Shown here: piece after piece, positions 7,766-59,838 of the stretch
Numbering within the stretch: the stretch's first letter is position 1
How the letters are laid out: every line of letters starts with the position of its first letter
Source: Dendrobates tinctorius
Taxonomy: Eukaryota
Assembly: GCF_039654945.1 (NCBI RefSeq)
Contig: NW_027361753.1
Span: 558,001-622,000, forward strand
Length of the DNA: 64,000 bases
Direction of reading: 5' to 3'
Translations under genes and position numbers: made by a program
The notes under the pieces: generated by a model
Told to the model about the DNA's origin: nothing
Database searches by the model: none
What the model saw: only the letters and a program-made list of their open reading frames with translations

Positions 7766-10599
7766 AGCTAAATATTGGATGTTTCTTAATTTTTTTTTTT
7801 TTCTTTTATTGTATTAACGATTCCAGGATGAAGTCAAAATATTGCCAGTGACTCATTTCATGGGCCCGCAATAGTTTTCACCTTACTAGTTAACAGGAAA
7901 TATTAAGCGAGGGGAGGAAGCTGCATCATTCCTCGTGTGACATCCCTGCCAAAAACTCTTCTTAAGAAAGTGAATAAAAGCGCTTTTAAAATTCCCTTAG
8001 TGAAAGTTACTAAAAACCCCAAAAAAAAATTGCCTTGCAATTTAATCATATCACCCTCTATATCATAGCGCCACCCCCAATCCCTATTTTATTTTTGTGC
8101 CATTTTACAATTTATTTTTTTTTTCTTGTTTTTCTGGTTTCCTTCCCCAAACTTTTTCAGGCCAAGAAAGTTATTGGCTGTGATCTAATTTTGGTTTTGG
8201 CGGCTGTAGACTCACACGGGTCCCCACCCAGCATCATTATCTTGGGTTTAAGTTATAAAAATGAGAATTTTTTTTTTTTTTCCTGTAAGGTTTCAGTTGC
8301 CTTTTACCCTTTCGAACTCCTTCTGCAAACAGAAGCGTCATTTTGTAAATTCGGAGGTGATACAAGTTTTAGCCTTTCTATAGCTGCCCTGCTGTAAACT
8401 TTTCGTTGCTTTTACCCAGGGCCATTCCCTCTTTGTAACATTTCGGTCCTAGATCCCCAGATATATACTGTATATATAATGCTGTGTTTGCCCTTCAGGC
8501 TACAGAAAATCCCACCATGAAGCCCACCAGTAAGACATATGGCGGGGCTTTTCTTTTCGCTATAGAAATGTCCTTCCCCTAGTCTGGCATGCGAGCGCTC
8601 CCCTCCATCAGAGGCCTAGGTAGCACTGATGAGAGTATTGATGAGATAATAGCGTTCATCCGGGGAACACGTGCTCACGAAAGAATAGACCTCAGTAACC
8701 CAGTAACCTTACGGCAAGGAGATGATGAGGCCGGAATGTGTCACAATGGGCTCCGAGCGTCACTGCTACACTGAAAGCCATTACACGTGGCCTGCCATTT
8801 CTAAATCATTTTATCACTTTGTTCCCACTACCATTTTTCGCTGCTAAAGAGTAACCGTCGTTTTAATTTTTATACCATAAATCAATAGTACACATGAAAA
8901 TAGGAAACTTTATACTATATCTTAGAAGATTAAATCTGCTTTTTTTCCTGTTGGACTGAGTTTTGTTTTTTTTTACACTCAATTCAGAGGTAAAATCATT
9001 TGTCTTCATTGAATACAGATTTTCATATGACTGAGATAGATGACAGCTGGTGCCTATTACGTTCTATGGAGAAGAAGAGGAGGGAGGAGTTAGAGACATT
9101 TCGATGCTCAACAGCCGCAACACATGCAGGGACTCCTGTTTGTTAGGCAATCCCTTCATGTGTTTCGGCTGTCAAACAGCCACGAGACATGCAGGCGCAG
9201 GGACTCCCCAACATATTCTTAAGCATGCCAAAGACACTCTGTTAGCATGCAACCTGTCCAAGTACGTTCGCTCATCACTATTGAGATAGATAGATAGAGA
9301 GATATATATATATACATACACATATACACATTTTTTTCAGATTTTTATTTATTGTTTTGTCACGCAATGCTATTTATGCATTTTTATTTGACTTTTTTTT
9401 TACCTTTACATAACCCTCTTTTCTTTAACTCACTCTGAGATCTTTTTTTTTTTTTTTTTGGTAAAAGGAGGAAGAAAAGCTCCTTAAGGGAGTTAGAAAC
9501 TTGGGTTGTGTATATGTAAAAAAAAAATTTACAAAAAAATTACCATTTACTCTAGGAACCTATAGAGTAAAGTATAGAAACCTTTTTTTTCGTACGTCCC
9601 CCAAAACGTGTTTTTCGCTGCACTGCCTCGCATGTACCTGTAATAGGTAAATTGGATTATAAACTCTGCTGAGGCAGCAAGAATCCCGAATAAAGGACTG
9701 GTATAATAATAATAAATGAAAAAAAAAAAGTCTCATCCCAGCTGGCAGTCAGTGTTAATAAAACCTGTCTGGGTTATATTAATGTAGTAGACAGGAGGGT
9801 GCAGGAGAGCATTAAACCAGAGAGCTAGTTACATTTTAACCTCGCCGGCCGCTGACGTCTGTGGTCGTTAGACATTTGTCTGGCTTCTTGCAGTGTGATC
9901 TGGCTGTCCTGTCTCCTGGAAATTACTATTATAATCTTGGAAGGTCATACCCCGCCCCTCTACGCAGGATGCGTGTACACAAAGAGTTAACAATATGTCT
10001 ATCCGGATTGGATTTTAAAGCACAATGCATTAAAAAAAAAAATTGACAAAAATAAAAAATACTGAATAATTTGAATTTATTTATTTATTTTTTTTCCATT
10101 TTTATGTTTCTCTCTCGCGGGCGCCTATCGCAGCTGCTGTGACTGTGCGTGGATGTGAGTGTAGCATGTGCTGAGGGGACTTGATTAGATTATGAAGGCA
10201 GACATAAGTAATGATTAACTTTTAAAGTCTGCACACTGTCTCCAACCTGGCTGGTGGTAAAGCTTTTTTTTTTTTTTTTTTCCATTCCCTTCTAGCTAAG
10301 TAGTCTGTGACCGCCTGGTATTGCACTGCAAGGGATGGAAAGGGAACGGTTGTACAATAGGGGGGAGGTAAGGAGGGACTGTTTTTGTTTTTTTTGTTTT
10401 TTTTTTTTTTTTTTTTTTTTCCCCTCCTCCTCTTTCTTTATCCCATTCAGCAGTGGAATTTATTGAGTGGAATGTAATAAATGCTGCAAACTGTCTGGAA
10501 AGGAAGAGGTTAATTTTTTTCGGTTTATGTAGACTATATGGGTTGGATATTATTTATCTCGCAGCGATCACCTTGATTGTAAACCAGAGGTGCAGGTAA

Positions 10600-10977: not shown

Positions 10978-12370
10978 AGGGTCCAACTTGGGGGGGGGGG
11001 GGGGGGCACAACATGACTGGGCCCCATATTGGTAATACCGATTACAACTATGGTGGCGTGCTGATATTACCGCCATATGGTGACCAAGTAGTGGTAGATA
11101 CCAGTCCTGCAGATCATATAGGAGATTACAGCACAGTTATTGATGGTGACTTACCGCTGACATTTTTTCTTATGGAATCGTTCCGTTTTCCCATCTTTTC
11201 CATCTGGCCCAGACCGACATGACAACTTCTCCAGCCAGGGCTCATCTGGAGAGGTTACAACAAGAACACATTTGACGTCTTTCCAGCACTGTCCCCAATG
11301 GGACTATTCCCAACCTGCTGATACCCCAATACTGAGACTCTGCCGTATGTGTCCCTATCACTGCACCTGCTGTTTGGCACAATAACAGCGCTCCTCTTAC
11401 TGCCCCACATAGTACTGCCACCACTGTGCCCCTTACATAGTAATAATGCCCTGTGAAAATGCCGTAGAAATCAGTGTCCAAATTTTGCCCCTTTGACGAC
11501 AATACTGAGTGCCCCCCTATATACAGTATATTGCCACAGCTCCCCCGAGACACAGTATAACAACCCCTACAGAAGCCCTCAAACTGTCTAATGGCCCCTA
11601 CATTAGCTTCCAGGTAGTGTAATAGCCCGAAACTGTTGGACGGCCCTCACAATGACCCCTGAGCTGTATAATGGCCACTGCATTAAAGTGAACCTGTCAT
11701 TATTAAACTAAAGGCACGGCCATAATGGCGCTGGTATATTGATAGAATACATACTTTCAGTGAAGAAATCCGCAGTCTGGTTGTTATAAAGTCCTCATTA
11801 GGAGTTGTGGTCTCCGTGCATCGGGGCGGGCCTGTGAGTAGGGTCTTCAGCTCTGCTGTCTATCTCCTCTTCCTTATTTAAATTCCGCGCCGGCGCTGTC
11901 CTTCCCCGCGGCCGACGCTTGCACAGATTGATCTCTTGATGGGCTTCAATAAAATAGTGACGTTAACGTCGCGTGCGCAGATTCATCTTCGAAGTCTTTG
12001 GGGGAAATGGCAGATTGAGACCTGTGCATGGCCATACACGTAGCGGGCCCCTCTGAGCGCGTGGCCCGGGCTTGCAATAATTTTTAGAGGTTTTTCTAAA
12101 CTTTGTGTACCCTGAAATAAACTTCCTTCGTAGACCGCGCAGTTATTGGATGAGCAGATTACCCTATCGCTGCGTCCTGTTATTAAATCGGCGCCTGATA
12201 ACCCATGTAAACACATTGGGAATAGGAGGTGAACAAGTCCACGTATTTTTATGGTAATATAATATTAGAAAACATTTCACCACTTTTTTTTTTTTATTTT
12301 TTCCAGACTTTAATAAAAGACGTCTCCATGTCTTGTTAGGAGTTTCCTGCCTGACTGAGGTTATTATATA

Positions 12371-25545: not shown

Positions 25546-26859
25546 ACTCCAAACTCAAGGTCTCTTAGAGGGAAAGTATGCTATGAACTTGCATCGACTT
25601 TTTTTCTGTTTTATCCAAGCTAATATCAGTAAAATATGGAGTTCTGACCTCTGGGACCCCTGCAAATCATGAAAATTAAGGATCTGAGGTCTCCTTGGCT
25701 TTTTCTCTGTGCAACGCCACTCTTGGCAACCTGCTATGCCCTACTAAGGGTTTGAAAAAAAATTATATAGTTGCTTTCTTCTAAAAATGGCAACCACATT
25801 CGCTTTAATGGAGCTGCAATACCAGATCAATCTTCTGGTGGCACTATTTCTGGAAAAAAAATACAGCCATATTTTTTTCTAATCCTGTACAAAAAGGAAA
25901 AATCGCCGTGTCCGGAAAGGTTTAACTAATGCTTATTAGTCTTTGAAGATAAATCTTATTTTTCAAACATTTTTTTTCATTTTCTTCAGGCCACTAGGGG
26001 GCAGCCTTTTCAGTTTGGTTTTCATTTGCATACAGAAGGTTGCCGATTCCTAGCTGCAGAGTCTCCGCCTTGTCCGCGCTGCAGACGTACAGACCTTGCT
26101 TCTACGCCTGATGTACTTTCTTTTTCTTTTAAAACTGTTGGATGATAATTTGCGCTGTAACGATGACAGTCCGCACTCCATATATCAGGCGACACGTAGC
26201 GGGACGGAGAAGAAGATGGTCGCGGAGTGGAATATTTACGCTGGCATGCTCTTTTCCTCGGAATATTTGAGGGTTGGCGTAATGCTCGACGCAAAGAATT
26301 ATGGCAGAAAAATGTGACCGGCGACCATGAGACCCTCAAACTGTATGTTCCGCTGCCGCCTAAATACACACTGCATCCTAAACGTGGCCCAGCTGGCACG
26401 TCTCCTGGATTCTGGCTGCTGTCTAGCGAGGGAAACATATTACATTGAATACTTGGATGTTAAAAAAAAAAAGAAAGATTTAGGCTGACGACAGACGCAA
26501 CTATCATGATGGGTGTTGTAGTTCTGGGCTTGGCTAGCGCTAACCCTACTCAGACAAGTGTTTGTCATCATCACCTAGGCTTTACTCTATGGGCAGCTCT
26601 GCTGGTTGGCACCTGGAATGACCAGTTCAAGGCAGGAGAAGACTTGGGAAGAAACTTTTCATAATATCTTTGGCCAAAATTAGATAAAAAGTTAATGAAA
26701 CCGGAATGTAGGATTCTTGGATGACACCATAAAAAACACCAGTATCTGAACCAGGTGGAAAAACTGCAACTGGAAAGGTGATACTTCAACCCATTTAGTT
26801 CCTGGCCGGTTTTTGGGTTTTTTTGTTTTTTTTTTGCACTTTCGTTTTTGTCGTCCCCC

Positions 26860-28283
26860 CCAATAGATCCTGCCACACACAGTATGATGCCCCCACAGTA
26901 GATCCTGCCACACACAACATGATACCACACAGTAGATCCTGCCACACAGAGTATGATGCCCCCACAGTAGATCCTGCCACACACAGTATGATACCCCCAC
27001 AGTAGATCCTGCTACACACAGTATGATGCCCCCACAGTAGATACTGCCACACACAAGATGATACCCCCACAGTAGATCCTGCTACACACAGTATGATGCC
27101 CCCACAGTAGATACTGCCACACACAAGATGATACCCCCACAGTAGATCCTGCCACACACAGTATTTTGCCCCCACAGTAGATCCTGCCACACACAGTATG
27201 ATGCCCCCACAGTAGACCCTGCCACACACAAGATGATACCCCCACAGTTGTTCCTGCCACACACAGTATAATGCCCCCAAAGTAGATCCTGCCACACACA
27301 GTATGATACCCCCACAGTAGATCCTGCCACACACAATATGATACCCCACAGTAGACCCTGTCACACACAGAGTATGATGCCCCCACAGTTGTTCCTGCCA
27401 CACACAGTATAATGCCCCCACAGTTGTTCCTGCCACACACAGTATAATGCCCCCACAGTAGATCCTGCCACACACAGTATAATGCCCCCACAGTAGATCC
27501 TGCCACACACAATATGATACCCCACAGTAGACCCTGTCACACACAGAGTATGATGCCCCCACAGTTGTTCCTGCCACACACAGTATAAAGCCCCCACAGT
27601 AGATCCTGCCACACACAGTATTTTGCCCCCACAGTAGACCCTGCCACACACAGTATGATACCCCCCCACAGTTGTTCCTGCCACACACAGTATAATGCCC
27701 CCACAGTAGATCCTGCCACACACAGTATGATACCCCCACAGTAGATCCTGCCACACACAATATGATACCCCACAGTAGACCCTGTCACACAGAGTATGAT
27801 GCCCCCACAGTTGTTCCTGCCACACACAGTATAATGCCCCCACAGTAGATCCTGCCACACACAGTATTTTGCCCCCACAGTAGACCCTGCCACACACAGT
27901 ATGATACCCCCCCACAGTTGTTCCTGCCACACACAGTATAATGCCCCCACAGTAGATCCTGCCACACACAATATGATACCCCACAGTAGACCCTGCCACA
28001 CACAGTATAATGCCCCCACAGTAGATCCTGCCACACACAGTATAATGCCCCCACAGTTGTTCCTGCCACACACAGTATAATGCCCCCACAGTAGATCCTG
28101 CCACACACAGTATTTTGCCCCCACAGTAGATCCTGCCACACACAATATGATACCCCACAGTAGACCCTGCCACACACAGTATAATGCCCCCACAGTAGAT
28201 CCTGCCACACACAGTATGATACCCCCACAGTAGACCCTGCCACACACAGGATGATGCCCCCACAGTTGTTCCTGCCACACACA
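26860..28283. repeat. Minisatellite, ~35-bp unit, ~40 copies with variant shuffling
   Basis: Unit CAGTAGATCCTGCCACACACAGTATGATGCCCCCA, with variants GTTGTTCC, AGACCC and ATTTTG. Confidence 0.95.
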
Positions 28284-30513
28284 GGCATCCCACTTGTCTG
28301 TGTGACCTGCTTCTCCGATGAGCTGGTCTCTGCTGCCATGGGAATGTCACATGACTGAAAGGTCCTTGAGTCTCTACTCAAACTGAGCAGTGGAGAAGGG
28401 ATTTGATGGCTCCCTGCTCCACCGATGTATTTACCTGTATCTGTGTCCTGAGGACTTATACAGTTGAAGGTGGGGCATACCCCTGAACTCCCAGGCAGCT
28501 CCCAACCTCTAGATCAGGAGGTATGGTAACAGAACACCCCTTTATAATGATTGTTGCCTCCTCACCCGTTATAACAGTACAATATACAGTAGCGACACAT
28601 TATAAGATGGGTGTTTCCTGTGAAGTCAGGGTCCAACCTAAATATTAAACCTGAGACCCTTCCTTAAACCATGAGATTATGCTTCCTAGCATTCCTGACT
28701 TTCCAGCGGTTTCCTTTTTACCGCAGGCCCTTAAATGAATCCAGCACAAAGCAGAAGAGACGCGGCAGCTGGCGCGGGTTACACCATTACAGCACAGTGG
28801 CCTCTTTTCATAGGCGGCAGTTCCAGGGGTGACGGTGGGATTAGCCAAAGGGTAATCAAAGACGACTTCAGGCAAGAAGATTGGGTTTCAAAAATCCTTG
28901 AAGAATTTCATTCTTTAGGGCTGGAGAGGTAGTATAAAAATGAGAGAGATTACCTACCGAGGCAGGCGACACGTCATATCATTATATATATTTGTATCAA
29001 CAATATTATTTTAATCTAGTATGAACCCAACTGGATTATGAAATATTCTGGCTTATCTGACAGCCCTAGATTAGTGCAGAAGGAACTTTTAGAGGTTTTT
29101 TCTAGCGCATCTGCTCAAAAAAAGCCACAAAAATTGGCAAAAAATGCTTCAAAGACTCTTCCTATTTATTTCATTCTTAATCCACTTTGCTGTTCAAATT
29201 TTGTGGGTTTTTTTTCCACATTTTAAAACCTCTGGTGGGAAAGAAAAAGCTGCGTCTGACTCTGATGAAATCCGCTCCAAACATAGCACCGTCTAGTAAA
29301 AAAAAAATATTCCAAAACGGTTTATTAAATGTTTGAGGAAACAAAAAACTCCTCAAACAAATGTGTTTCCCGAATCAGTTTCCACTTGAAAACCTACTGT
29401 TTTTGATCCCCTTAAACAAACCCTCCACCTACTCGTATCCTGCACAAGTTTTTAGAGGAGTTTTTGGAACAAAAACTCCAAAATCCTCTTCAAAACTCCT
29501 AAAATCCTTGGAGATTATGTTCACTTTCGGCTATAAAATCATAGTAGAAAGACTTCGCATGAACACACCTTTAGGTAATGTGCACATGGGGGTTTGGTGC
29601 AGAAGCTAAGCCAAAACTTTTTGAGAAATTTTGATATTTGAAGGAGGATTTAGACACTTTTCGATCAGTTTCTGGTCCAAAAACTCCGAGAAAAACTCTT
29701 TGTGTACTCAGCCTTAGGGTAGAGTCATATGACCGCTTTCTGTACATCAGAAATTGGGCATGTTACCGATTTTTTTTCCCCAAACCAAGTGAACAAAAAA
29801 ATTTGCACATCGCCATAGAATAACACGGGTACGAGTTCAATCTGTGAAAACACGGATAGCACTCGCCTGATATAATCGGTCGTGTGTACGAGCCCTTAAA
29901 AAAATAGAAGCATTTCCAAAATGCCCCATCTGATGCTCCCATTTTGGGAGATTCTTTTTAAAATGAAGCAGCACAGGGATCAGCTGGTCGCCTCCTATAC
30001 AACTTATCTTCTCCTATGTGATTGTATGTGCCGGGAAGTTCTCAGTACCTATGTAAAAGATATCCCTGCCCCTATTCACCCAACAAAGGCAAAAAGAGTG
30101 TCCATTTGGCTTCTGCCCGGCTGGTATACAATGGTACAACTTCTTGTGTGGTGCAGTCTGCTGACCTATTGCGCATAAAAGGAATGTAGGAACCTATAGG
30201 CAATTCATGAAACATTGGGGTTTACATCGGGACATGCTTTGATGTACGCAGCGAACATAGTGTGAATAGATTTTTATGGGCGGACATATCACCGAAGTAG
30301 CTGCGACATGGCCCTGAGCTGGAGGGGGCTCGCCACCAACAGCGACTACTTTAGCTGGATGTGCATCCAGAGACGCCGAAGTCATCTGCCGCCTCCCGCA
30401 CCAGCTATAGAATAGGAGCCCCTGCGGCGTGGAAGTGTGGGGTACGGTGAGTAGTATCATTTTTCAAAAAATGTATTAGAGCAAAGCAAAATGTCTGACA
30501 TACATACAAAAAT

Positions 30514-32008
30514 AGGACACATGTACCAGGATGGGGTACATCTACTGCATATGAGGATGAGGGACATATATACCTGGATGGGGGACATATACTGTATATG
30601 AGGATCATATATACCTGGATGGGGCACATTATACCAGGATGGGGTACATATACTGTATATGAGGATGAGGGACATATACTGTATATGAGGATCATATATA
30701 CCTGGATGGGGGACATTATACCAGGATGGGGTACATATACTGTATATGAGGATGAGGGACATATATACCTGGATGGGGGACATATACTGTATATGAGGAT
30801 CATATATACCTGGATGGGGCACATTATACCAGGATGGGGTACATATACTGTATATGAGGATGAGGGACATATACTGTATATGAGGATCATATATACCTGG
30901 ATGGGGGACATTATACCAGGATGGGGTACATATACTGTATATGAGGATGGGGGACATATACTGTATATGAGGATGAGGGACATATACTGTATATGAGGAT
31001 CATATATACCTGGATGGGGCACATTATACCAGGATGGGGTACATATACTGTATATGAGGATGGGGGGATATACTGTATATGAGGATCATATATACCTGGA
31101 TGGGGGACATTATACCAGGATGGGGTACATATACTGTATATGAGGATGAGGGACATATATACCTGGATGGGGGACATATACTGTATATGAGGATCATATA
31201 TACCTGGATGGGGACATTATACCAGGATGGGGTACATATACTGTATCTGAGGATGAGGGACATATATACCTGGATGGGGGACATATACTGTATATGAGGA
31301 TCATATATACCTGGATGGGGGACATTATACCAGGATGGGGTACATATACTGTATCTGAGGATGAGGGACATATATACCTGGATGGGGGACATATACTGTA
31401 TATGAGGATCATATATACCTGGATGGGGCACATTATACCAGGATGGGGTACATATACTGTATATGAGGATGAGGGACATATATACCTGGATGGGGGACAT
31501 ATACTGTATATGAGGATCATATATACCTGGATGGGGCACATTATACCAGGATGGGGTACATATACTGTATATGAGGATGAGGGACATATATACCTGGATG
31601 GGGTACATATACTGTATATGAGGATGAGGGACATATATACCTGGATGGGGGACATATACTGTATATGAGGATCATATATACCTGGATGGGGGACATTATA
31701 CCAGGATGGGGTACATATACTGTATCTGAGGATGAGGGACATATATACCTGGATGGGGGACATATACTGTATATGAGGATCATATATACCTGGATGGGGC
31801 ACATTATACCAGGATGGGGTACATATACTGTATATGAGGATGAGGGACATATATACCTGGATGGGGGACATATACTGTATATGAGGATGAGCGACATATA
31901 TACCTGGATTGGGGACATTATACCAGGATGGGGTACATATACTGTATATGAGGATGAGCGACATATATACCTGGATGGGGGACATTATACCAGGATGAGG
32001 GACATATA
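30514..32008. repeat. Homogeneous higher-order minisatellite; typical 108-bp unit of five GGATG-started monomers (15, 20, 26, 21, 26 bp)
   Basis: 36-aa period in the ORF track (MRIIYTWMGHIIPGWGTYTVYEDEGHIYLDGGHILY). The 26-bp monomers contain TACTGTA. Confidence 0.93.
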
Positions 32009-33614
32009 CAGTGGGGAAAAAAAGTATTTAGTCAGTCAGCAATAGTGCAAGTTCCACCACTTAAAAAGATGAGAGGCGTCTGTAATTTACATCATAGGTA
32101 GACCTCAACTATGGGAGACAAACTGAGAAAAAAAAATTCAGAAAATCACATTGTCTGTTTTTTTTTCATTTTATTTGCATATTATGGTGGAAAATAAGTA
32201 TTTGGTCAGAAACAAAATTTCATCTCAATACTTTGTGATATATCCTTTGTTGGCAATAACAGAGGTCAAACGTTTTCTGTAAGTCTTCACAAGGTTGCCA
32301 CACACTGTTGTTGGTATGTTGGCCCATTCCTCCATGCAGATCTCCTCTAGAGCAGTGATGTTTTTGGCTTTTCGCTTGGCAACACGGACTTTCAACTCCC
32401 TCCAAAGGTTTTCTATAGGGTTGAGATCTGGAGACTGGCTAGGCCACTCCAGGACCTTGAAATGCTTCTTACGAAGCCACTCCTTCGTTGCCCTGGCGGT
32501 GTGCTTTGGATCATTGTCATGTTGAAAGACCCAGCCACGTTTCATCTTCAATGCCCTTGCTGATGGAAGGAGGTTTGCACTCAAAATCTCACGATACATG
32601 GCCCCATTCATTCTTTCATGTACCCGGATCAGTCGTCCTGGCCCCTTTGCAGAGAAACAGCCCCAAAGCATGATGTTTCCACCACCATGCTTTACAGTAG
32701 GTATGGTGTTTGATGGATGCAACTCAGTATTCTTTTTCCTCCAAACACGACAAGTTGTGTTTCTACCAAACAGTTCCAGTTTGGTTTCATCAGACCATAG
32801 GACATTCTCCCAAAACTCCTCTGGATCATCCAAATGCTCTCTAGCAAACTTCAGACGGGCCCGGACATGTACAGGCTTAAGCAATGGGACACGTCTGGCA
32901 CTGCAGGATCTGAGTCCATGGTGGCGTAGTGTGTTACTTATGGTAGGCCTTGTTACATTGGTCCCAGCTCTCTGCAGTTCATTCACTAGGTCCCCCCGCG
33001 TGGTTCTGGGATTTTTGCTCACCGTTCTTGTGATCATTCTGACCCCACGGGGTGGGATTTTGCGTGGAGCATCAGATCGAGGGAGATTATCAGTGGTCTT
33101 GTATGTCTTCCATTTTCTAATTATTGCTCCCACAGTTGATTTCTTCACTCCAAGCTGGTTGGCTATTGCAGATTCAGTCTTCCCAGCCTGGTGCAGGGCT
33201 ACAATTTTGTTTCTGGTGTCCTTTGACAGCTCTTTGGTCTTCACCATAGTGGAGTTTGGAGTCAGACTGTTTGAGGGTGTGCACAGGTGTCTTTTTATAC
33301 TGATAACAAGTTTAAACAGGTGCCATTACTACAGGTAATGAGTGGAGGAAAGAGGAGACTCTTAAAGAAGAAGTTACAGGTCTGTGAGAGCCAGAAATCT
33401 TGATTGCTTGTTTCTGACCAAATACTTATTTTCCACCATAATATGCAAATAAAATGAAAAAAAAACAGACAATGTGATTTTCTGGATTTTTTTTTCTCAG
33501 TTTGTCTCCCATAGTTGAGGTCTACCTATGATGTAAATTACAGACGCCTCTCATCTTTTTAAGTGGTGGAACTTGCACTATTGCTGACTGACTAAATACT
33601 TTTTTTCCCCACTG
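32009..33614 (-). mobile_element. Full-length young Tc1-like transposon (DD34E) with ~205-bp TIRs
   Basis: TA at 32007-08 and 33615-16; TIRs CAGTGGGGAAAAAAAGTATTTAGTCAGTC... almost identical. Confidence 0.96.
32225..33247 (-). CDS. Tc1 transposase, uninterrupted 340 aa, DD34E
   Basis: [25 protein letters not shown]. The AT-hook-like linker reads RSDAPRK, versus RSGAP in the related fragment at ~59450. Confidence 0.95.
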
Positions 33615-34137
33615 TATATGAGGATGGGGCACATTATACCTGGATGAGTCACATACATACCTGGATGGGCTACATATATAAATGGATGGGGCACATACTG
33701 TATATGTCAACAATCCTGGTATAATGTACCCCATCCAGATATATATGTGCTCCATCCAGGTATATTTGTCCCCATTATGGTATAATGTGCCCATCTTCGT
33801 ATATATGTTCCCCATCCTGGTATAATGTACCCCATCCAGGTATATACAGCTCTGGCAAAATTAAGAGACCACTGCACAGTTTTATAAAAATCAGCTTCTC
33901 TCCATGTCTGACAGCCATTCCATTCCAGTGTCAGTTGAATTCCAACCAGAGTACACCTCATTCTACTTAATGTGCTTCTGATTAGGTGATCATCTGAACC
34001 AAATCTTATTTAACGAAGGAAAGTATAAAATACCCTGCTGTGGTGTTCACAATCCTCTTGGAATAGGACAAGCTGGATGGCAAAACAAGTGCTAGTAATA
34101 TCCCAAAAGTAATAGGACTGAAAAATAACTTTTAACC

Positions 34138-35170
34138 ATGCCAAAGGAGTTGAAAAGAAAAGTCTTGAGTGAGGAAAAGAAGGGCTCAATTCTGGCTTTA
34201 CTAGCTGATGGATACAGTGAATGTCATGTTGCCACCATCCTTAAAATTTCTAAGACAGCAGTCCATTACAACAAGGTCAAGCAGCAGATATTGGGGACAG
34301 CAAAGCTACAGACTGGAAGAGGGCAAAAATGACTCTCCGCTGACCGGGATGACCGTCCTCTTATTCGAATGTCACTCAGCAACCGCAGGATGACATCAAG
34401 TGACCTACAAAAGGAATGGCAAATGGCAGCTGGGGTGAAGTACACGGCAAGAACAGTTTGTAACAGGCTCCTAGAGGCAGGGCTCAAGTCATGTAAAGCT
34501 AGAAAAAAGCCTATCATCAATGAGAAGCAAAGGAGAGCCAGGCTGAAGTTTGCCAAAGACCATAAGGATTGGACCATAGAGGACTGGAGTAAGGTAAACT
34601 TCTCTGATGAGTCTAATTTTCAGCTTTGCCCAACACGTGGTTAGACGGAGACCTGGAGAGGCGTACAACCCACACTGTCTTGCGCCCACTGTGAAATTTG
34701 ATCTTTGCGAAGGACGTATGAATCAAGCTGCATACAAGGTTATCCTGGAAAAACAGTTGGAAAAAAGTGCTGCGGAATATGTCGGTGCTATAGAAATAAA
34801 ATTTATTATATTATTATTATAGTTGATTCCTTCTGCTCAGGCAATGTTCCCCAACTCTGAGGACTGGTGTTTCCAGCAGGACAATGCGCCATGCCACACA
34901 GCTAGGTCAATCAATGTGTGGATGAAGGAGCACCACATCAAATCCCTGTCATGGCCAGCCCAGTCTCCAGACATGAAGCCCATTGAAAACCTCTGGAATA
35001 TAATCAAGAGGAAGATGGATAGTCATAAACCATCAAACAAAGAACTGCTTACATTTTTGTACCAGGAGTGGCATAAGGTCACCCAGAAGCAGTGTGAGAG
35101 ACTGGTGGAAAGCAGCCAAGACACATGAAAGCTGTGATTAACAATCATGGTTATTCCACAAAATATTGAT
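34138..35170 (+). pseudogene. Disrupted Tc1 transposase
   Basis: ORF pieces 34138-34332, 34369-34644 (FSDES) and 34823-35128 (QQDNAPCH...SPDMKPIE), broken by a stop, deletions/frameshifts and a 61-bp insertion. Confidence 0.9.
34760..34820 (+). mobile_element. Extremely 5'-truncated L2-like LINE 3' end inserted in the Tc1 transposase
   Basis: AAGTGCTGCGGAATATGTCGGTGCTATAGAAATAAA plus an (ATT)n tail, flanked by a 5-bp TSD AGTTG (34755-59 / 34821-25). The L2 assignment is from recalled amphibian L2 3' ends. Confidence 0.65.
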
Positions 35171-35447
35171 TTCTGAACTCTTCCTGAGGTAAAACATTAG
35201 TATTGTTGTTTCTAAATGATTATGAACTTGTTTTCTTAGCATTATTTGAGGTCTGCAAGCACTGCATTTTTTTTGTTGTTTTGACCATTACTCAATTTCT
35301 GAAAATAAATACAAAATTTATTGCTTGGAAATTCGGAGACGTTGTCAGAAGTTTATAGAATAAAATAGCAATTTACTCAAAAATATAAAGAGAAAAATCA
35401 GACAAACTGAAAATGTTGCAGTGGTCTCTTAATTTTTGCCAGAGCTG

Positions 35448-35935
35448 TATATATACCTGGATGTGGCACATTATTCCAGGATGGGGCACAATATAGTAGG
35501 AAGGTGTACATATATATGAGGATGGGGGAATATATACCTGGATGAGGCACATATATACAAGAATGGGGCACAGTTATACCAGGATGGGGTGCATATATAC
35601 GAGGATGGGAGCTATATACACGAGGATGGGGCACATATATACCTGGATGGGGCACATATATAACTGGATGGGAGACATGTGTACAAGGATGGAGGACATA
35701 TATACCAGGATGGGGGATATATATACCTGGATGGGGCACATTTTCCCAGGATGGGGGGCATATATGCTAGGTTGCGGGGACATATATATACCTGGAAGGG
35801 GACCAGGATGGGGCACATTATTCCAGGATGGGGCCCAGGATAGAGCTAGAGCACATTATACCAGGAAGGGGACCAGGATTGGGGACATTATACCAAGAAG
35901 AGGACCAGGATGGGAGACATTATCCCAGAAAGGAG
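35448..35935. repeat. Degenerate 20-21-bp minisatellite, ancestral form of the 30.5-32 kb array
   Basis: GGATGGGGCACATATATACC[A/T] monomers; 7-aa period (MGHIYTR); no TACTGTA. Confidence 0.88.
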
Positions 35936-46339: not shown

Positions 46340-47388
46340 TCCTGCAGAGAGATAAAGACTGACCCAATTCCTGTTGAAAGACAGACCTGCACCTATTTCC
46401 AGTAGATACTAAGATCATCCACGACTTCCTGTAGAGACAAAAACCCACCCCTACTTTCAGTAGAGAAAAAGACCCATCCAAACTTCCTGTACAGACAAAA
46501 CCCAGCCTACGTTTCCTGTAGAGAGACAAAGATCCACCCCCACATCCTGTAGAGACATAAAGACTACCCCATTTCCTGTAGAAAGACAAAAAACTCACCC
46601 TCACTTCCTGTAAAAAGACAGAAACCCACCCTCACTTCCTGTAGAGAGATAAAAACCCATCTCGACTTCCAGTAGAGAGATAAAACCCTACCTACATTTC
46701 CTGTGGAAAGGCAAAGATCCACACCCACTTCCTGTGGAGAGATAAAAACCCACCCGACTTCTTGTATGGAGACAAACCCAGCCTATATTTCCTGTACAAA
46801 GACCAAGATTTACCCACTCTTCCTGTTCAGAGACAAAACACTACACATATTTTCTGTAGAGATCTGAAGGCCCAACTTCAGTGCCTATAGAAAGATGAAG
46901 ACCCGCCCCACTTCCTGTAGACAGATTAAGACCCACCCACTTCCTTTACAGATATAAAGACCCACCCCATTTCCTGTAGAGAGATAAAGACCTGCCAAAA
47001 TGTCCTGTAGCCAGATAAAGACCAACCCCACTTCCTGTACAGAGATAAAGACCAACCCCACTTCCTGTACAGAGATAAAGACCAACCCGACTTCCTGTAC
47101 AGAGATAAAGACCAACCCCACTTCCTGTACAGAGATAAAGACCCACCCCACTTCCTGTAGACAGATAAAGACCCACCCCACTTACTGTACAGGGATAAAG
47201 AGCCACCCCACTTCTTGTACAGAGATAAAGATGTGCCCCTACTTCCTGTACAGAGATAAAGACTCGCCCCTACTTCCTGTACAGAAATAAAGACTTGCCC
47301 CTACTTCCTGTACTGAGATAAAGACCCACCACACTTCCTGTGCAGAGATAAAGATATGCCCCAACTTCCTGGACAGAGATAAAGACTT
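46340..47388. repeat. 30-31-bp minisatellite; degenerate on the left, homogeneous from ~47000
   Basis: Unit CACTTCCTGTACAGAGATAAAGACCAACCC; 10-aa period. Confidence 0.9.
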
Positions 47389-47933
47389 TATAGATAAATG
47401 AATAGCTACTGTGCTTAGAGTCACTGATATCTATTGTCTTACTCAAATGGATTTGAAGAGAAAAAAAATCAAAGTCCAGAGCACAATAAAAGAACCAGGT
47501 TTGGACAGAGAACAACAATAAGTAACACTAAAAAAGTCATATATATATATATCCCTTTGGATGCTTAATGCCAATTGTAGTGCAAGAAACCAAGATTACC
47601 TTGTAAAGCAGTAGGGGTTAACAGCCACAGAGGGGGAGGGCGGGCTCAGTCTCACAAGTGAAAGCTGATTCTGTGTTTGGAGATCCCAAAAGTCCATCTG
47701 TAAATAATAACACTCCTCCGGTGGGTTGCTGATTAAATGCTTCTTGCTTAAGAACTGCAGTAATCCTGTTAGCGATGCAACCCCGGCCGGTGGTAGCAGT
47801 CGCACTAATGGTAGGCTGGGTGGGAAAACACACTGAACTAGGTGCCTGAACTTCACACTATCCTCGTCAGCACAGGACCTGTGTGAAGTCAGAGACACGT
47901 GATGCACTGGGCTGCAGCCTAGATATTGCAATG

Positions 47934-50900
47934 AGAGATAAAGACTTGCCCCTACTTCCTGTACAGAGATAAAGACTCACCCCTACTTCCTATACAGAGA
48001 TAAAGACTCACCCCTACTTCCTGTACAGAGATAAAGACTTGCCCCTACTTCCTGTACAGAGATAAAGACTTGCTCCTACTTCCTGTACAGAGATAAAGAC
48101 TCACCCTTACTTCCTGTACAGAGATAAAGACTCATTCCTACTTCCTATACAGAGATAAAGACTCGCCCCTACTTCCTGTACAGAGATAAAGACTTGTCCC
48201 TACTTCCTGTACAGAGATAAAGACTTGCCCCTACGTCCTGTACAGAGATAAAGACTTGCCCCTACTTCCTGTACTGAGTTAAAGACTCACCGCTACTTCC
48301 TGTACAGAGATAAATACTCACCCCTACTTCCTGTACAGAGATAAAGACTCACCCATACTTCCTGTACAGAGATAAAGACTCGCCCCTACTTCCTGTACAG
48401 AGATAAAGACCCAACCCACTTCCTAAGCAGAGATAAAGATATGCCCCAACTTCCTGTACAGAGATAAAGACTTGCCCCTACTTCCTGTACAGAGATAAAG
48501 ACTCGCCCCTACTTCCTGTACAGAGATAAAGACTCGCCCCTACTTCCTGTACAGAGATAAAGACTCGCCCCTACTTCCCGTACAGAGATAAAGTCTTGCC
48601 CCTACTTCCTGTACAGAGATAAAGACTCGACCCTACTTCCTGTACAGAGATAAAGACTCGCCCCTACTTCCTGTACAGAGATAAAGACTCACCCCTACTT
48701 CCTGTACAAAGATAAAGACTCTACCCTACTTCCTGTACAGAGATAAAGACTTGCCCCTACTTCCAGTACAGAGATAAAGACTTGCCCCTACTTCCTGTAC
48801 AGAGATAAAGACTCGCCCTTCCTGTACAGAGATAAAGACTCGCCCCTACTTCCTGTACAGAGATAAAGACTCGCCCCTACTTCCCATACAGAGATAAAGA
48901 CTTGTCCCTACTTCCTGTACAGAGATAAAGACTCACCCCTACTTCCCGTACAGAGATAAAGACTTGCCCCAACTTCCTATACAGGGATAAAGACTCGACC
49001 CTACTTCCTGTACAGAGATAAAGACTCGCCCCTACTTCCTGTACAGAGATAAAGACTCGCCCCTACTTCCTGTACAGAGATAAAGACTCACCCCTACTTC
49101 CCATACAGAGATAAAGACTCGCCCCTACTTCCTGTACAGAGATAAAGACTTGCCCCTACTCCCTGTACAGAGATAAAGACTCGCCCCTACTTCCTGTACA
49201 GAGATAAAGACTCGCCCCTACTTCCCATACAGAGATAAAGACTCGCCCCTACTTCCTGTACAGAGATAAAGACTTGACCCTACTTCCTGTACAGGGATAA
49301 AGACTCAACCCTACTTCCTGTACAGAGATAAAGACTCGACCCTACTTCCTGTACAGAGATAACGACTCGCCCCTACTTCCTGTACAGAGATAAAGACTTG
49401 CCCCTACTTCCCATACAGAGATAAAGACTCGCCCCTACTTCCTGTACAGAGATAAAGACTCGCCCCTACTTCCTGTACAGAGATAAAGACTCGCCCCTAC
49501 TTCCTGTACAGAGATAAAGACTCGCCCCTACTTCCTGTACAGAGATAAAGACTTGCCCCTACTTCCTGTACAGAGATAAAGACTCATTCCTACTTCCTGT
49601 ACAGAGATAAAGACTAATTCCTACTTCCTGTACAGAGATAAAGACTCGCCCCTACTTCCTGTACAGAGATAAAGACTTGCCCCTACTTCCAGTACAGAGA
49701 TAAACACTTGCCCCTACTTCCTGTACAGAGATAAAGACTTGCCCCTACTTCCCATACAGAGATAAAGACTCGCCCCTACTTCCCGTAGAGATAAAGACTC
49801 GCCCCTACTTCCTGTACAGAGATAAAGACTTGACCCTACTTCCTGTACAGAGATGAAGACTTGCCCCTATTTCCTGTACAGAGATGAAGGCTTGCCCCTA
49901 TTTCCTGTACAGAGATAAAGACTCACCCCTACTTCCCGTACAGAGATAAAGACTTGCCCCAACTTCCTATACAGGGATAAAGACTCGACCCTACTTCCTG
50001 TACAGAGATAAAGACTCGCCCCTACTTCCTGTACAGAGATAAAGACTCGCCCCTACTTCCTGTACAGAGATAAAGACTCACCCCTACTTCCCGTACAGAG
50101 ATAAAGACTCGCCCCTACTTCCTGTACAGAGATAAAGACTTGCCCCTACTTCCTGTACAGAGATAAAGACTTGCCCCTAATTCCTGTACAGAGATAAAGA
50201 CTCGCCCCTACTTCATGTACAGAGATAAAGACTCGCCCCTACTTCCTGTATAGGGATAAAGACTCAACCCTACTTCCTGTACAGAGATAAAGACTCGACC
50301 CTACTTCCTGTACAGAGATAAAGACTCGCCCCTACTTCCTGTACAGAGATAAAGACTTGCCCCTACTTCCTGTACAGAGATAAAGACTTGCCCCTACTTC
50401 CCATACAGAGATAAAGACTCGCCCCTACTTCCCGTACAGAGATAAAGACTCGCCCCTACTTCCTGTACAGAGATAAAGACTCGCCCCTACTTCCTGTACA
50501 GAGATAAAGACTTGCCCCTACTTCCTGTACAGAGATAAAGACTCATTCCTACTTCCTGTACAGAGATAAAGACTCATTCCTACTTCCTGTACAGAGATAA
50601 AGACTCGCCCCTACTTCCTGTATAGAGATAAAGACTTGCCCCTACTTCCAGTACAGAGATAAAGACTTGCCCCTACTTCCTGTACAGAGATAAAGACTCG
50701 CCCCTACTTCCCGTACAGAGATAAAGACTCGCCCCTACTTCCTGTACAGAGATAAAGACTTGACCCTACTTCCTGTACAGAGATGAAGACTTGCCCCTAT
50801 TTCCTGTACAGAGATGAAGGCTTGCCCATATTTCCTGTACAGAGATAAAGACTTGCCCCTACTTCCTGTACAGAGATAAAGACTCACCCCTACTTCCTGT

Positions 50901-53660
50901 ACAGAGATAAAGACTTGCCCCTACTTCCTGTACAGAGATAAAAACTCGCCCCTACTTCCTGTACAGAGATAAAGACTCACCCCTACTTCCTGTACAGAGA
51001 TAAAGACTCACCCCTACTTCCCGTACAGAGATAAACACTCGCCCCTACTTCCTGTACAGAGATAAAGACTTGCCCCTACTTCCTGTACAGAGATAAAGAC
51101 TCGCCCCTACTTCCTGTACAGTGATAAAGACTCGCCCCTACTTCCTGTACAGAGATAAAGACTCGCCCCTACTTCCTGTACAGAGATAAAGACTCGCCCC
51201 TACTTCCTGTACAGAGATAAAGACTTGCCCCTACTTCCTGTACAGAGATAAAGACTCGCCCCTACTTCCTGTACAGAGATAAAGACTTGCCCCTAATTCC
51301 TGTACAGAGATAAAGACTCGCCCCTACTTCCCATACAGAGATAAAGACTCACCCCTACTTCCTGTACAGAGATAAAGACTCGCCCCTACTTCCTGTACAG
51401 AGATAAAGACTTGCCCCTACTTCCTGTACAGAGATAAAGACTCGCCCCTACTTCCTGTACAGAGATAAAGACTTGCCCCTAATTCCTGTACAGAGATAAA
51501 GACTCGCCCCTACTTCCCATACAGAGATAAAGACTCGCCCCTACTTCCTGTACAGAGATAAAGACTTGCCCCTACTTCCTGTACAGAGATAAAGACTCGC
51601 CCCTACTTACTGTACAGAGATAAAGACTTGCCCCTAATTCCTGTACAGAGATAAAGACTCGCCCCTAATTCCTGTACAGAGATAAAGACTCGCCCCTACT
51701 TCCCATACAGAGATAAAGACTCACCCCTACTTCCTGTACAGAGATAAAGACTCGCCCCTACTTCCTGTACAGAGATAAAGACTCGCCCCTACTTCCTGTA
51801 CAGAGATAAAGACTTGCCCCTACTTCCTGTACAGAGATAAAGACTTGCCCCTACTTCCTGTACAGAGATAAAGACTTGCCCCTACTTCCTGTACAGAGAT
51901 AAAGACTCTCCCCTACTTCCTGTACAGAGATAAAGACTCTCCCCTTCTTCCTGTACAGAGATAAAGACTCGCCCCTACTTCCCGTACAGAGATAAAGACT
52001 TGCCCCTACTTCCTGTACAGAGATAAAGACTCGCCCCTTCTTCCTGTACAGAGATAAAGACTCGCCCCTACTTCCTGTACAGAGATAAAGACTCGCCCCT
52101 ACTTCCTGTACAGAGATAAAGACTTGCCCCTACTTCCCATACAGAGATAAAGACTCGCCCCTACTTCCTGTACAGAGATAAAGACTCGCCCCTTCTTCCT
52201 GTACAGAGATAAAGACTCGCCCCTACTTCCCGTACAGAGATAAAGACTTGCCCCTACTTCCTGTACAGAGATAAAGACTCGCCCCTACTTCCTGTACAGA
52301 GATAAAGACTTGCCCCTACTTCCTGTACAGAGATAAAGACTCGCCCCTACTTCCCATACAGAGATAAAGACTCGCCCCTACTTCCTGTACAGAGATAAAG
52401 ACTCGCCCCTACTTCCTGTACAGAGATAAAGACTTGCCCCTACTTCCTGTACAGAGATAAAGACTTGCCCCTACTTCCTGTACAGAGATAAAGACTTGCC
52501 CCTACTTCCTGTACAGAGATAAAGACTCGCCCCTACTTCCTGTACAGAGATAAAGACTCGCCCCTTCTTCCTGTACAGAGATAAAGACTCGCCCCTACTT
52601 CCCATACAGAGATAAAGACTCGCCCCTACTTCCTGTACAGAGATAAAGACTCGCCCCTTCTTCCTGTACAGAGATAAAGACTCGCCCCTACTTCCCATAC
52701 AGAGATAAAGACTCGACCCTACTTCCTGTACAGAGATAAAGACTCGCCCCTTCTTCCTGTACAGAGATAACGACTCAACCCTACTTCCTGTACAGAGATA
52801 AAGACTCGCCCCTTCTTCCTGTACAGAGATAAAGACTCGCCCCTACTTCCTGTACAGAGATAAAGACTCGCCCCTACTTCCTGTACAGAGATAAAGACTC
52901 GCCCCTACTTCCCATACAGAGATAAAGACTCGCCCCTACTTCCTGTACAGAGATAAAGACTCGCCCCTTCTTCCTGTACAGAGATAAAGACTCGCCCCTA
53001 CTTCCCATACAGAGATAAAGACTCGCCCCTACTTCCTGTACAGAGATAAAGACTCGCCCCTTCTTCCTGTACAGAGATAAAGACTCGCCCCTACTTCCCA
53101 TACAGAGATAAAGACTCGACCCTACTTCCTGTACAGAGATAAAGACTCGCCCCTTCTTCCTGTACAGAGATAAAGACTCAACCCTACTTCCTGTACAGAG
53201 ATAAAGACTCGCCCCTTCTTCCTGTACAGAGATAAAGACTCGCCCCTACTTCCTGTACAGAGATAAAGACTCACCCCTACTTCCTGTACAGAGATAAAGA
53301 CTCGCCCCTACTTCCCATACAGAGATAAAGACTCGCCCCTACTTCCTGTACAGAGATAAAGACTCGCCCCTTCTTCCTGTACAGAGATAAAGACTCGCCC
53401 CTACTTCCTGTACAGAGATAAAGACTTGCCCCTACTTCCCATACAGAGATAAAGACTTGCCCCTACTTCCTGTACAGAGATAAAGACTCGCCCCTACTTC
53501 CTGTACAGAGATAAAGACTCGCCCCTACTTCCTGTACAGAGATAAAGACTCGCCCCTACTTCCTGTACAGAGATAAAGACTCGCCCCTACTTCCTGTACA
53601 GAGATAAAGACTCGCCCCTACTTCCTGTACAGAGATAAAGACTCGCCCCTACTTCTTGTA
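47934..53660. repeat. 31-bp satellite, ~185 copies
   Basis: Unit CTTCCTGTACAGAGATAAAGACTCGCCCCTA over 5.7 kb. Confidence 0.97.
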
Positions 53661-57116: not shown

Positions 57117-57615
57117 AAGCATTCCCAGTCTCGGCTTTTTTTTACTGTGAATTGTGACATACTTCCACTAACCACATTTACCACAGAGTGCCTGCTGCAT
57201 TCCCAGCCCATGCCTTTTTACTGTGAATTGTGATGTCCCCCCACTATCCAGATTCACCACAAAGTGGCTGCTGCATTCCCAATCCCTGCTTTTTTTTTTA
57301 CTGTGAATTGTGATGTCCCCCCACTATCCAGATTCACCACAAAGTGGCTGCTGCATTCCCAATCCTTGCTTTTTTTTTTTACTGTGAATTGTGATGTCCC
57401 CCCACTATCCAGATTCACCACAAAGTGGCTGCTGCATTCCCAATCCATGCTTTTTTTTTACTGTGAATTGTGACGTCCTCCCATTATCCAGATTCACCAC
57501 AAAGTGGCTCCTGCATTCCCAGCCACTGCTTTTTTTTTACTATGTATTGTGACATCAACCCACTATCCAAATTCCCCACAAAGTGGCTACTGCATTCCAA
57601 ATCATTGCTTTTTTA
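57117..57615. repeat. ~80-bp tandem repeat, ~6 copies, probably internal to a degenerate hAT element (~57010-57873)
   Basis: CTGCATTCCC recurs at ~57195, 57271, 57351, 57433, 57512 and 57590. Confidence 0.88.
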
Positions 57616-59661: not shown

Positions 59662-59838
59662 TTATAAACCAATATACCAGACCAGCACCCACAAGAAATA
59701 ATAGATAAATAGGGGTGCACAAATACATGGAAGAGCCAACGTGCAAAGTGTATAGAAAATCAAAAAAGAAAAATGCACAGCTCATACAAAAATACAAAAT
59801 TTATTGAAAACAAATAGGACATAATATACAAAAACATA

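What the first reader, a model, noticed from the sequence alone, without database searches (positions are those of the whole stretch)
30514..35935. Minisatellite built from amplified Tc1 excision footprints; empty, filled and excised target states coexist in one array
Seen: the Tc1 at 32009-33614 sits in GGACATA-TA[CAG...CTG]TA-TATGAGG. Removing it gives the empty target CATATATATGAGG, which occurs verbatim in the old degenerate part of the array (35509-35521; monomers there are 20-21 bp). The homogeneous array 30514-32008 carries roughly 25-30 monomers reading CATA-TA-CTG-TA-TATGAGG (first clean one 30590-96). These are 26 bp, i.e. 21+5. Known: TA-C(A/T)G-TA is the canonical footprint of Sleeping Beauty-type Tc1 excision (3 nt of the end plus the duplicated TA). 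The young homogeneous block abuts the left end of this very young Tc1 (near-identical TIRs), and repeats to its right are degenerate. The junctions do not fit insertion into an existing footprint monomer. Inference: excision of a Tc1 from this monomer type left a footprint, and repair of the excision break, or unequal exchange with a still-filled chromatid, amplified it into a 108-bp higher-order satellite. That would be a transposon-driven route to satellite birth that also multiplies TA targets.
Basis: partly seen in the sequence, partly recalled or inferred. Interest (0 to 1): 0.8.

Follow-up and report, generated by a model that had tools for sequence, protein, structure and literature searches.

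The report
Transposon excision scar amplified in minisatellite
In a poison-frog minisatellite, 29 repeat units carry the 5-base scar that a Tc1-type jumping gene leaves when it cuts itself out, and an intact copy still sits at the same spot in a neighbouring unit; this is a tidy record of transposon traffic, but not evidence that the transposon created or expanded the satellite.

Summary
An intact ZB-like Tc1 element (32009-33614) has TA duplications and 206/207-identical terminal repeats. It sits in GGACATA-TA[...]TA-TATGA, the centre of an ATATATAT palindrome.

The array to its left (30529-32008) is a 108-bp, five-monomer higher-order repeat. It holds 29 monomers of 26 bp reading CATA-TA-CTG-TA-TATGA. 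That is exactly an empty-type 21-mer plus CTGTA at the TA where the Tc1 sits.

An empty version of that monomer survives in the old array (35499-35519), with similar neighbours. I put the excision-scar reading at about 0.8.

The wider interpretation is not supported.
- The 20-21-bp satellite existed first, and a relative is present in Ranitomeya imitator, so this is not satellite birth.
- The scarred monomer at the array's left edge has 2 changes in 26 bp. The resident Tc1 shows at least four (about 0.25%) in 1606 bp. The scar therefore probably predates this copy.
- Nothing ties the amplification to transposon breaks rather than ordinary unequal exchange.
- The scar destroys the preferred target rather than multiplying it.

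Read data could neither confirm the junctions nor give a genome-wide census.

The parts
30514..30554 (+). Left edge of the array: a degenerate partial monomer, then a diverged 26-mer (30529-30554, GGATGGGGTACATCTACTGCATATGA)
   Evidence: It has 2 substitutions against the E-type 26-mer, so the scarred monomer type predates the latest amplification.
30555..31992 (+). Young higher-order minisatellite. The unit is A(21) B(26) C(15) D(20) E(26) = 108 bp, with 87-, 113-, 47- and 114-bp variants. It holds 28 of the 29 TACTGTA-bearing 26-mers.
   Evidence: Five of the seven complete units are identical.
31993..32008 (+). Left half of the filled monomer, GGATGAGGGACATA + TA (target-site duplication at 32007-32008)
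32009..33614 (-). Intact ZB-like Tc1/DD34E transposon, 1606 bp. TIRs at 32009-32215 and 33408-33614, identical at 206 of 207 positions.
   Evidence: It is 98.0-98.6% identical in DNA to seven Ranitomeya imitator copies.
32225..33247 (-). Transposase ORF of 340 aa, with HTH_SB, HTH_Tnp_Tc3_2 and DDE_3 domains and catalytic residues D153/D244/E279
33615..33621 (+). Right half of the filled monomer: TA (duplication) + TATGA
33622..33700 (+). Short stretch of diverged monomers ending in GGATGGGGCACA-TA-CTG-(TA), a second TACTGTA (33696-33702) at a forward-to-reverse junction
33701..33846 (-). 146-bp block of the same minisatellite in inverted orientation, ending at the left end of the second Tc1
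   Evidence: period 20, reverse-complement consensus; I2-I15
33847..35447 (+). Second, degenerate Tc1-like element of another family (ends CAGCTCTGGCAAAA). TA at 33845-46 and 35448-49. The transposase is broken into pieces.
   Evidence: 32 listed positions (more not shown) differ from the family consensus, and it carries a 66-68-bp insert
35448..35935 (+). Old degenerate part of the minisatellite, grading into a 32-bp dimer variant at 35787-35933
35499..35519 (+). Empty-state monomer GGAAGGTGTACATATATATGA. It equals the E-type 26-mer without CTGTA (2 mismatches) and carries the intact ATATATAT target.

Best explanation
**What it is.** This is an ordinary 20-21-bp frog minisatellite that serves as a landing pad for Tc1-type transposons.

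**The target.** One rare monomer variant ends in TGA instead of CCT. That creates the palindrome C-ATATATAT-G, which is the preferred target of ZB/SB-type elements.

**Three events, as I read them.**
1. Some time ago a Tc1-type element with CAG...CTG ends inserted at the central TA of such a monomer. It later excised, and end-joining left the canonical scar TA-CTG-TA. This turned the 21-mer into a 26-mer.
2. The scarred monomer was then carried along when a five-monomer, 108-bp unit was amplified very recently. The amplification was by the usual array processes of unequal exchange and conversion. This gave 29 copies, all with the same CTG form.
3. Independently and recently, a still-intact ZB-like Tc1 inserted at the same central TA of another TGA-type monomer. 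That monomer lies at the right border of the amplified block. The insertion now marks, and probably sets, the limit of homogenisation.

A third TGA-type monomer in the old array was never hit.

**Shown:** the sequences, the states, the structure of the higher-order repeat and the integrity of the element.
**Inferred:** the order of events, and that the scar came from an earlier element.
For: **Exact fit of the scar.** Filled site minus the element, keeping 3 nt of the element end, gives GGACATA-TA-CTG-TA-TATGA. That is the 26-mer, letter for letter.

**An empty counterpart exists.** The old-array monomer at 35499-35519 is the E-type 26-mer without CTGTA. It sits in a similar order of neighbours: a D-like monomer two places before it, then GGGGGA-type and GAGG-type monomers after it.

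**The element belongs to a family with this behaviour.**
- It has D153/D244/E279 and aligns to the SB100X catalytic domain at E = 1.8e-83.
- Its size, TIR length and ORF length match Anura 'ZB-like' elements (PMC9777934).
- ZB leaves footprints of 0-3 bp, like SB and Frog Prince, and prefers ATATATAT with the central TA as insertion site (PMC7913693).
- The insertion here is at exactly that central TA (I1).

**Single origin.** All 29 copies are CTG.

**Such scars are enriched in these genomes.** I counted TATA-NNN-TATA in 315 kb (the window without the array, plus seven R. imitator loci). CAG or CTG filled 6 of 48 distinct sites, against about 1.5 expected. Two of them lie 31 and 166 bp from a Tc1 end.

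**The scar is older than this Tc1.**
- The edge 26-mer has 2 substitutions in 26 bp.
- The Tc1 has 3 internal differences from its consensus plus 1 TIR mismatch.
- Higher-order units are 99.1% identical on average.
Against: - No genome-wide census of the family was possible, so a non-transposon origin of the 26-mer at another locus cannot be excluded.
- The age argument rests on 2 substitutions in one edge monomer. Minisatellite edges may mutate or convert faster than unique DNA.
- The left half of the filled monomer is identical to the young A-type monomer. It could therefore belong to the amplified block rather than to an old empty monomer.
- The Logan contigs laid on the locus were swamped by tens of thousands of Tc1 copies. 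They did not confirm either array/Tc1 junction.
Confidence: 0.6

Rival explanations
1. The resident Tc1 at 32009-33614 is itself the source. It excised from one chromatid and left TACTGTA. Unequal exchange with the still-filled chromatid, or slipped repair of the break, placed the scarred and filled monomers side by side and drove the amplification of the 108-bp unit.
For: - The homogeneous block abuts the left end of the element, and the repeats to its right are degenerate.
- The a*-type monomer GGATGAGGGACATATACTGTATATGA occurs 3 times. It is exactly the scar this filled monomer would leave.
- Both the amplification and the element are very young.
Neither is verified.
Against: - The left-edge 26-mer has 2 substitutions in 26 bp, against about 0.25% for the element.
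- If it is a homologue, a TACTGTA monomer also lies in the diverged stretch to the right of the element (33684-33702), next to a much older Tc1.
- The neighbours of the filled monomer (a D-type on both sides) match no position in the higher-order repeat.
- Adjacency is equally explained if the insertion acts as a barrier to homogenisation.
- No mechanism needs the break in order to amplify the unit.
Confidence: 0.12
2. The extra CTGTA is not a transposon scar. It arose by an unrelated small insertion or by a palindromic template switch (CATATAC-T-GTATATG is a 7-bp-arm palindrome). The Tc1 simply chose the best ATATATAT target in the array.
For: - The 26-mer core is itself a near-perfect palindrome centred on the T of CTG (the reverse-strand matches differ by one base).
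- The array is TA-rich and contains inverted blocks.
- The young-array sequence looks multicopy in two species labels (depth in bin 31800-31926 is 21k and 78k, against 166-391 in the old array). The variant may therefore be old and widespread.
Against: - The position would have to coincide: the central TA, one of about 20 positions.
- The sequence would have to coincide too: CWG flanked by a duplicated TA, about 1 in 32.
- Those same 5 bp would also have to be missing in the one TGA-type monomer that holds a Tc1.
- No copy of CTGTA lies adjacent, so it is not a tandem duplication.
- A template switch would need two switches to return to the forward monomer.
Confidence: 0.15
3. The Tc1 inserted into an existing 26-mer at the TA before or after CTG. 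One copy of the resulting CTGTA-CTGTA (or TACTG) tandem repeat was then lost, by slippage, by gap-repair misalignment or by collapse in assembly or polishing. This would mimic a 'filled' state.
For: - Insertion at the TA before CTG would give ...CCCCA-CTGTA-CTGTA-TATGA, a perfect 5-bp tandem repeat, which is prone to slippage (derived).
- All other TGA-ending monomers in the young block carry the scar.
Against: - It needs an extra rare event within the short life of a young element.
- It leaves the match between CTGTA and the element end unexplained.
- The scar lacks the preferred ATATATAT target (PMC7913693).
Confidence: 0.05

Closest known systems
Canonical Sleeping Beauty / Frog Prince / ZB excision footprint (TA + 3 nt of the element end + TA)
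   Same: The 26-mers read TA-CTG-TA at the central TA of an ATATATAT palindrome. The resident element has CAG...CTG ends and a DD34E transposase of the ZB/SB group. ZB footprints are reported as 0-3 bp, like those of SB and Frog Prince (PMC7913693).
   Different: The footprint here is inferred from sequence, not observed after an excision. It is present in 29 tandem copies, because the scarred unit was amplified.
Satellites and tandem repeats derived from transposable elements (for example Tetris in Drosophila virilis, PMC4079207; MITE-borne repeats in Donax, PMC3879986; review PMC12628747)
   Same: Both link a mobile element to the make-up of a tandem repeat.
   Different: In those cases the monomers are pieces of the element itself. 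Here the satellite is older than, and unrelated to, the element. Only 5 bp per scarred monomer come from a transposition cycle. I found no description of an amplified footprint in the searched library.
ZB-like Tc1/DD34E transposons of Anura (PMC9777934)
   Same: Length 1606 bp against 1596-1618 reported. ORF 340 aa against 340-343. TIR 207 bp against up to 211. TA target-site duplication.
   Different: Nothing of note. This is an ordinary, probably active, member. I did not place it in a tree against ZB and SB.

Membership tests
Tc1/mariner DD34E (ZB/SB group) autonomous element | TA target-site duplication flanking terminal inverted repeats that begin CAG | tested here: met
   TA at 32007-08 and 33615-16. 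Ends are CAGTGGGG...CCCCACTG. TIRs match at 206 of 207 positions.
Tc1/mariner DD34E (ZB/SB group) autonomous element | Single ORF with a paired-like HTH DNA-binding domain and a DDE catalytic domain with 34 residues between the second D and the E | tested here: met
   Pfam HTH_SB 4.7e-23, HTH_Tnp_Tc3_2 2.3e-23, DDE_3 6.6e-16. Residues D153, D244 and E279. SB100X catalytic domain at E = 1.8e-83.
Tc1/mariner DD34E (ZB/SB group) autonomous element | Demonstrated transposition (excision and reintegration) | not testable with these tools
   Only integrity and youth were shown: no stop codons, about 0.25% from the family consensus, and very many near-identical copies in read data.
SB-type excision footprint | TA + CAG or CTG + TA replacing a single TA at a former insertion site | tested here: met
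   26-mer = empty-type 21-mer + CTGTA at the central TA. The empty type is at 35499-35519 and the filled type at 31993-33621.
SB-type excision footprint | Produced by excision of an element observed at that site (before-and-after evidence) | not testable with these tools
   This needs population or sister-species alleles, or an excision assay. Read contigs gave no informative joint.
Higher-order-repeat satellite | Multi-monomer units far more alike than the monomers within a unit | tested here: met
   The 108-bp units are 99.1% identical on average, and 5 of 7 are identical. The monomers within a unit have lengths of 15, 20, 21 and 26 bp.
   The 20-21-bp family flanks both Tc1 elements in degenerate form. 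A 32-bp relative occurs in R. imitator at L003 36200-37250 without any scar.

The most novel reading that the evidence does not exclude
Tc1 insertion and excision at hot-spot TAs inside minisatellites does more than mark monomers. The double-strand breaks it causes, repaired from misaligned sister arrays, trigger local expansion. Active Tc1 families would then be a recurrent driver of higher-order-repeat formation in large frog genomes. Under this reading, the two other first-reader notes in this genome and the nearby scar-bounded 146-bp inversion would be instances of the same process.
Probability: 0.12. Interest if true: 0.7.

Novelty: new variant of a known kind. Interest (0 to 1): 0.4.

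Why it matters
If the reading holds, this locus shows the empty, occupied and vacated states of one transposon target side by side in a single short stretch. It also shows that a 5-bp excision scar can become a fixed, multiplied part of a satellite's monomer.

That gives a cheap marker for two things. One is dating transposon traffic relative to array amplification. The other is finding insertion hot spots in very large, repeat-rich amphibian genomes.

It does not show a new mechanism of satellite origin. It bears on no gene or function in this window.

Tried and rejected
**Searches that gave nothing**
- *Exact-protein look-up of the transposase.* Not on record, because this copy has private changes.
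- *Array ORF (31294-31665) against the protein collection,* to find other arrays. No hit at E <= 0.001.
- *Two scans of metagenome contigs,* one for the 26-mer and one for the generic monomer pair. Both returned nothing, as expected for frog DNA.
- *Scan's earlier findings, searched by sequence.* Blank.
- *Four literature searches* for an amplified footprint or a footprint-derived satellite. I found no precedent in the library. Absence there is not proof of novelty.

**Read evidence that was uninformative**
- I laid Logan contigs of four runs on 31800-35600.
- The output is dominated by tens of thousands of Tc1 copies.
- It shows no listed contig bridging either junction, and no listed joint that removes the element.
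- It therefore neither supports nor contradicts the assembly.
- I used it only for the family consensus of the two elements and for a rough hint that sequence like the young array is multicopy.

**Explanations considered and rejected**
- *The Tc1 integrated across both TAs of an existing scar, with loss of CTG.* The stagger would be of the wrong polarity and length for this transposase family, and there is no precedent.
- *The 26-mer is a tandem duplication.* There is no adjacent copy of CTGTA.
Full report
**What is there**

The region 30514-35935 is one locus of a 20-21-bp minisatellite (family consensus GGATGGGGCACATATATACCW). Two Tc1-like transposons interrupt it.

The first element spans 32009-33614 and is 1606 bp long.
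- It is flanked by TA on both sides.
- Its 207-bp terminal inverted repeats (TIRs) differ at one position, 32138.
- It encodes an uninterrupted 340-aa transposase on the minus strand, at 32225-33247.
- That protein has HTH_SB, HTH_Tnp_Tc3_2 and DDE_3 domains and catalytic residues D153/D244/E279.
- It matches the SB100X catalytic domain at E = 1.8e-83.
- The closest proteins in the public collection are from the poison frog Ranitomeya imitator, at 98% identity.
- Seven R. imitator copies are 98.0-98.6% identical in DNA.
- Size, TIR length and ORF length fit the 'ZB-like' Tc1/DD34E elements reported for Anura (PMC9777934).

The second element spans 33847-35447. It belongs to another Tc1 family and is degenerate.

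**The array**

I split 30529-32008 at every GGAT, which gives 69 monomers. They form a five-monomer unit of 108 bp:

| Monomer | Length | Sequence |
|---|---|---|
| A | 21 | GGATGAGGGACATATATACCT |
| B | 26 | GGATGGGGGACATATACTGTATATGA |
| C | 15 | GGATCATATATACCT |
| D | 20 | GGATGGGGSACATTATACCA |
| E | 26 | GGATGGGGTACATATACTGTATATGA |

- Five of the seven complete units are identical, and mean identity is 99.1%. The amplification is therefore very recent.
- Twenty-nine monomers carry CATATACTGTATATG or a one- or two-mismatch version, against 0.14 matches expected by chance.
- All are the CTG form.
- To the right of the first Tc1 and beyond the second, the monomers are degenerate, with 0-7 mismatches per 21 bp.

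**The central coincidence**

The occupied monomer reads GGATGAGGGACATA-TA-[Tc1]-TA-TATGA.
- Removing the element and one TA gives CATATATATGA.
- This contains ATATATAT with the insertion at its central TA.
- The palindrome extends 6 bp beyond the element on each side (I1).

The 26-mers read CATA-TA-CTG-TA-TATGA. That is the same monomer with TA + CTG + TA in place of the single TA.

An unoccupied, unscarred version survives at 35499-35519: GGAAGGTGTACATATATATGA.
- It matches the E-type 26-mer minus CTGTA with two mismatches.
- It has a D-like monomer two places before it.
- GGGGGA-type and GAGG-type monomers follow it.
- It therefore looks like the unamplified counterpart of the higher-order unit.

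**Is it a footprint?**

Published work on the related ZB element reports two things (PMC7913693). [quoted passage not shown] It also prefers a palindromic ATATATAT target whose central TA is the insertion site. From established knowledge of SB, the usual product is TA-C(A/T)G-TA.

The 26-mers fit on every count:
- the position is the central TA;
- the content is three nucleotides of the element end plus a second TA;
- the host monomer is the only variant that offers ATATATAT.

The 5 bp are not a copy of adjacent sequence, so a tandem duplication is excluded.

The main non-transposon alternative is a palindromic template switch, because CATATAC-T-GTATATG is a palindrome. It would need two switches. 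It would also leave unexplained why the one TGA-type monomer that holds a Tc1 lacks exactly these 5 bp.

As an independent check that such scars exist in these genomes, I counted TATA-NNN-TATA in 315 kb. That was the window without the array, plus seven R. imitator loci.
- CAG or CTG filled 6 of 48 distinct sites, where about 1.5 are expected.
- Two of these lie 31 and 166 bp from a Tc1 end, in L004 and L001.

I put the footprint origin at about 0.8.

**Which element, and when?**

- The 26-mer at the extreme left edge (30529-30554, CATCTACTGCATATGA) has two substitutions relative to its type, and the partial monomer before it is also degenerate. Array edges escape homogenisation, so this copy suggests the scarred monomer existed well before the latest amplification.
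- The resident Tc1 is much younger. The listed rows show three internal positions that differ from the near-unanimous letter of its family in the best-matching runs: 32258, 32884 and 33072 (further rows were not shown). It also has the one TIR mismatch.
- Four differences in 1606 bp predict about 0.07 substitutions in 26 bp. Seeing two has a probability of about 0.002 under equal rates.
- The caveat is that edge monomers of minisatellites may change faster than unique DNA.
- The neighbours of the occupied monomer (a D-type on each side) match no position in the 108-bp unit. It is therefore not simply a unit member that kept its element.

The most economical history has three steps:
1. An earlier insertion and excision in a TGA-type monomer.
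2. Amplification of a unit containing the scar.
3. A separate recent insertion into another TGA-type monomer at the border.

The TGA type is the only monomer with the preferred target, so repeated use of it is expected rather than coincidental.

**Did the transposon drive the amplification?**

The only argument is adjacency: the homogeneous block ends at the element's left end. A 1.6-kb non-homologous insert is also a natural stop for unequal exchange and conversion, which explains the same picture.

Two further claims fail.
- 'Satellite birth' does not hold. The 20-21-bp family is present in degenerate form on both sides of both elements. A 32-bp relative occurs in R. imitator (L003 36200-37250).
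- 'Multiplies TA targets' is the wrong way round. The scar splits ATATATAT into ATATAC and GTATAT.

**What could not be done**

The decisive test is a genome-wide census of the family and its +5 monomers, and it is out of reach here.
- The laid contigs were swamped by the two multicopy elements. They gave no listed contig across either junction and no joint that removes the element.
- They hint that sequence like 31800-31926 is multicopy in two species labels. Summed depth there is 21k and 78k, against 166-391 for 35483-35600. If that depth includes the 26-mers, it would further support an old scar. The output does not show whether it does.
- Protein-based and pattern-based searches for other arrays found nothing.

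**Related notes in the scan**

- a 'Tc1 excision footprints in a minisatellite, at the same TA that holds a Tc1 insertion' on another piece of this genome;
- a 'TACTGTA 360 bp from an intact Tc1' on another piece;
- the 146-bp inversion in this window.

**Verdict**

The larger claims are not supported: the same element as source, break-driven amplification, and a route to satellite birth.

This is a clean natural example of a known process, Tc1 excision scarring, caught and multiplied by another known process, array amplification. I found no published example of an amplified footprint in the library. I class it as a new variant of a known kind, of moderate interest.

Noticed in passing
window 33684-33849: A 146-bp block of the minisatellite (33701-33846) is inverted. 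Its left junction reads GGGGCACA-TA-CTG-TA-TATGTC, which is a donor flank, 3 nt of a Tc1 end, a TA and then an inverted monomer. Its right end abuts the left end of the degenerate second Tc1. That is the pattern expected if one transposon end was cut and joined to a TA 146 bp away while the free donor end was rejoined by end-joining.
   Followed up: partly
window 32009-33614; runs X1-X24: About 55-75% of the sampled 31-letter words of a stretch that is 70% Tc1 are held by runs under ten different organism labels. Copies in Ranitomeya imitator are 98-98.6% identical. Fish transposases (Hemibagrus, salmonids, Prochilodus) are 87-90% identical in protein. The family is very young and abundant across dendrobatids, and it belongs to the ZB-like group for which horizontal transfer has been proposed (PMC9777934).
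   Followed up: partly
window 8460-8480 and 11518-11532: Two isolated candidate Tc1 scars lie in unique sequence: GATATA-TA-CTG-TA-TATATAA and CTATA-TA-CAG-TA-TATTG.
   Followed up: partly
L001 11380-11420; L004 11241-11300: In Ranitomeya imitator, TATA-CAG-TATA interrupts (TA)n tracts 166 bp and 31 bp from the right end of a resident ZB-like Tc1. This would fit local hopping with a scar left behind.
   Followed up: partly
window 34754-34821: The second Tc1 carries a 66-68-bp A/T-rich insert that most genomic copies of its family lack. Many contigs in three runs skip it (joints).
   Followed up: no
window 58930-59662: A further partial copy of the ZB-like Tc1 lies here: a 749-bp match at 85% identity plus a 200-bp TIR match at 81%.
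   Followed up: no
window 1590-2683, 4834-5470, 7089-7753, 26855-28284, 46424-53660, 57136-57614: The window is unusually rich in unrelated minisatellites, with periods of 43, 33, 38/75, 35/246, 31 and 79 bp. One of them is a 5.7-kb array of a 31-bp unit.
   Followed up: no
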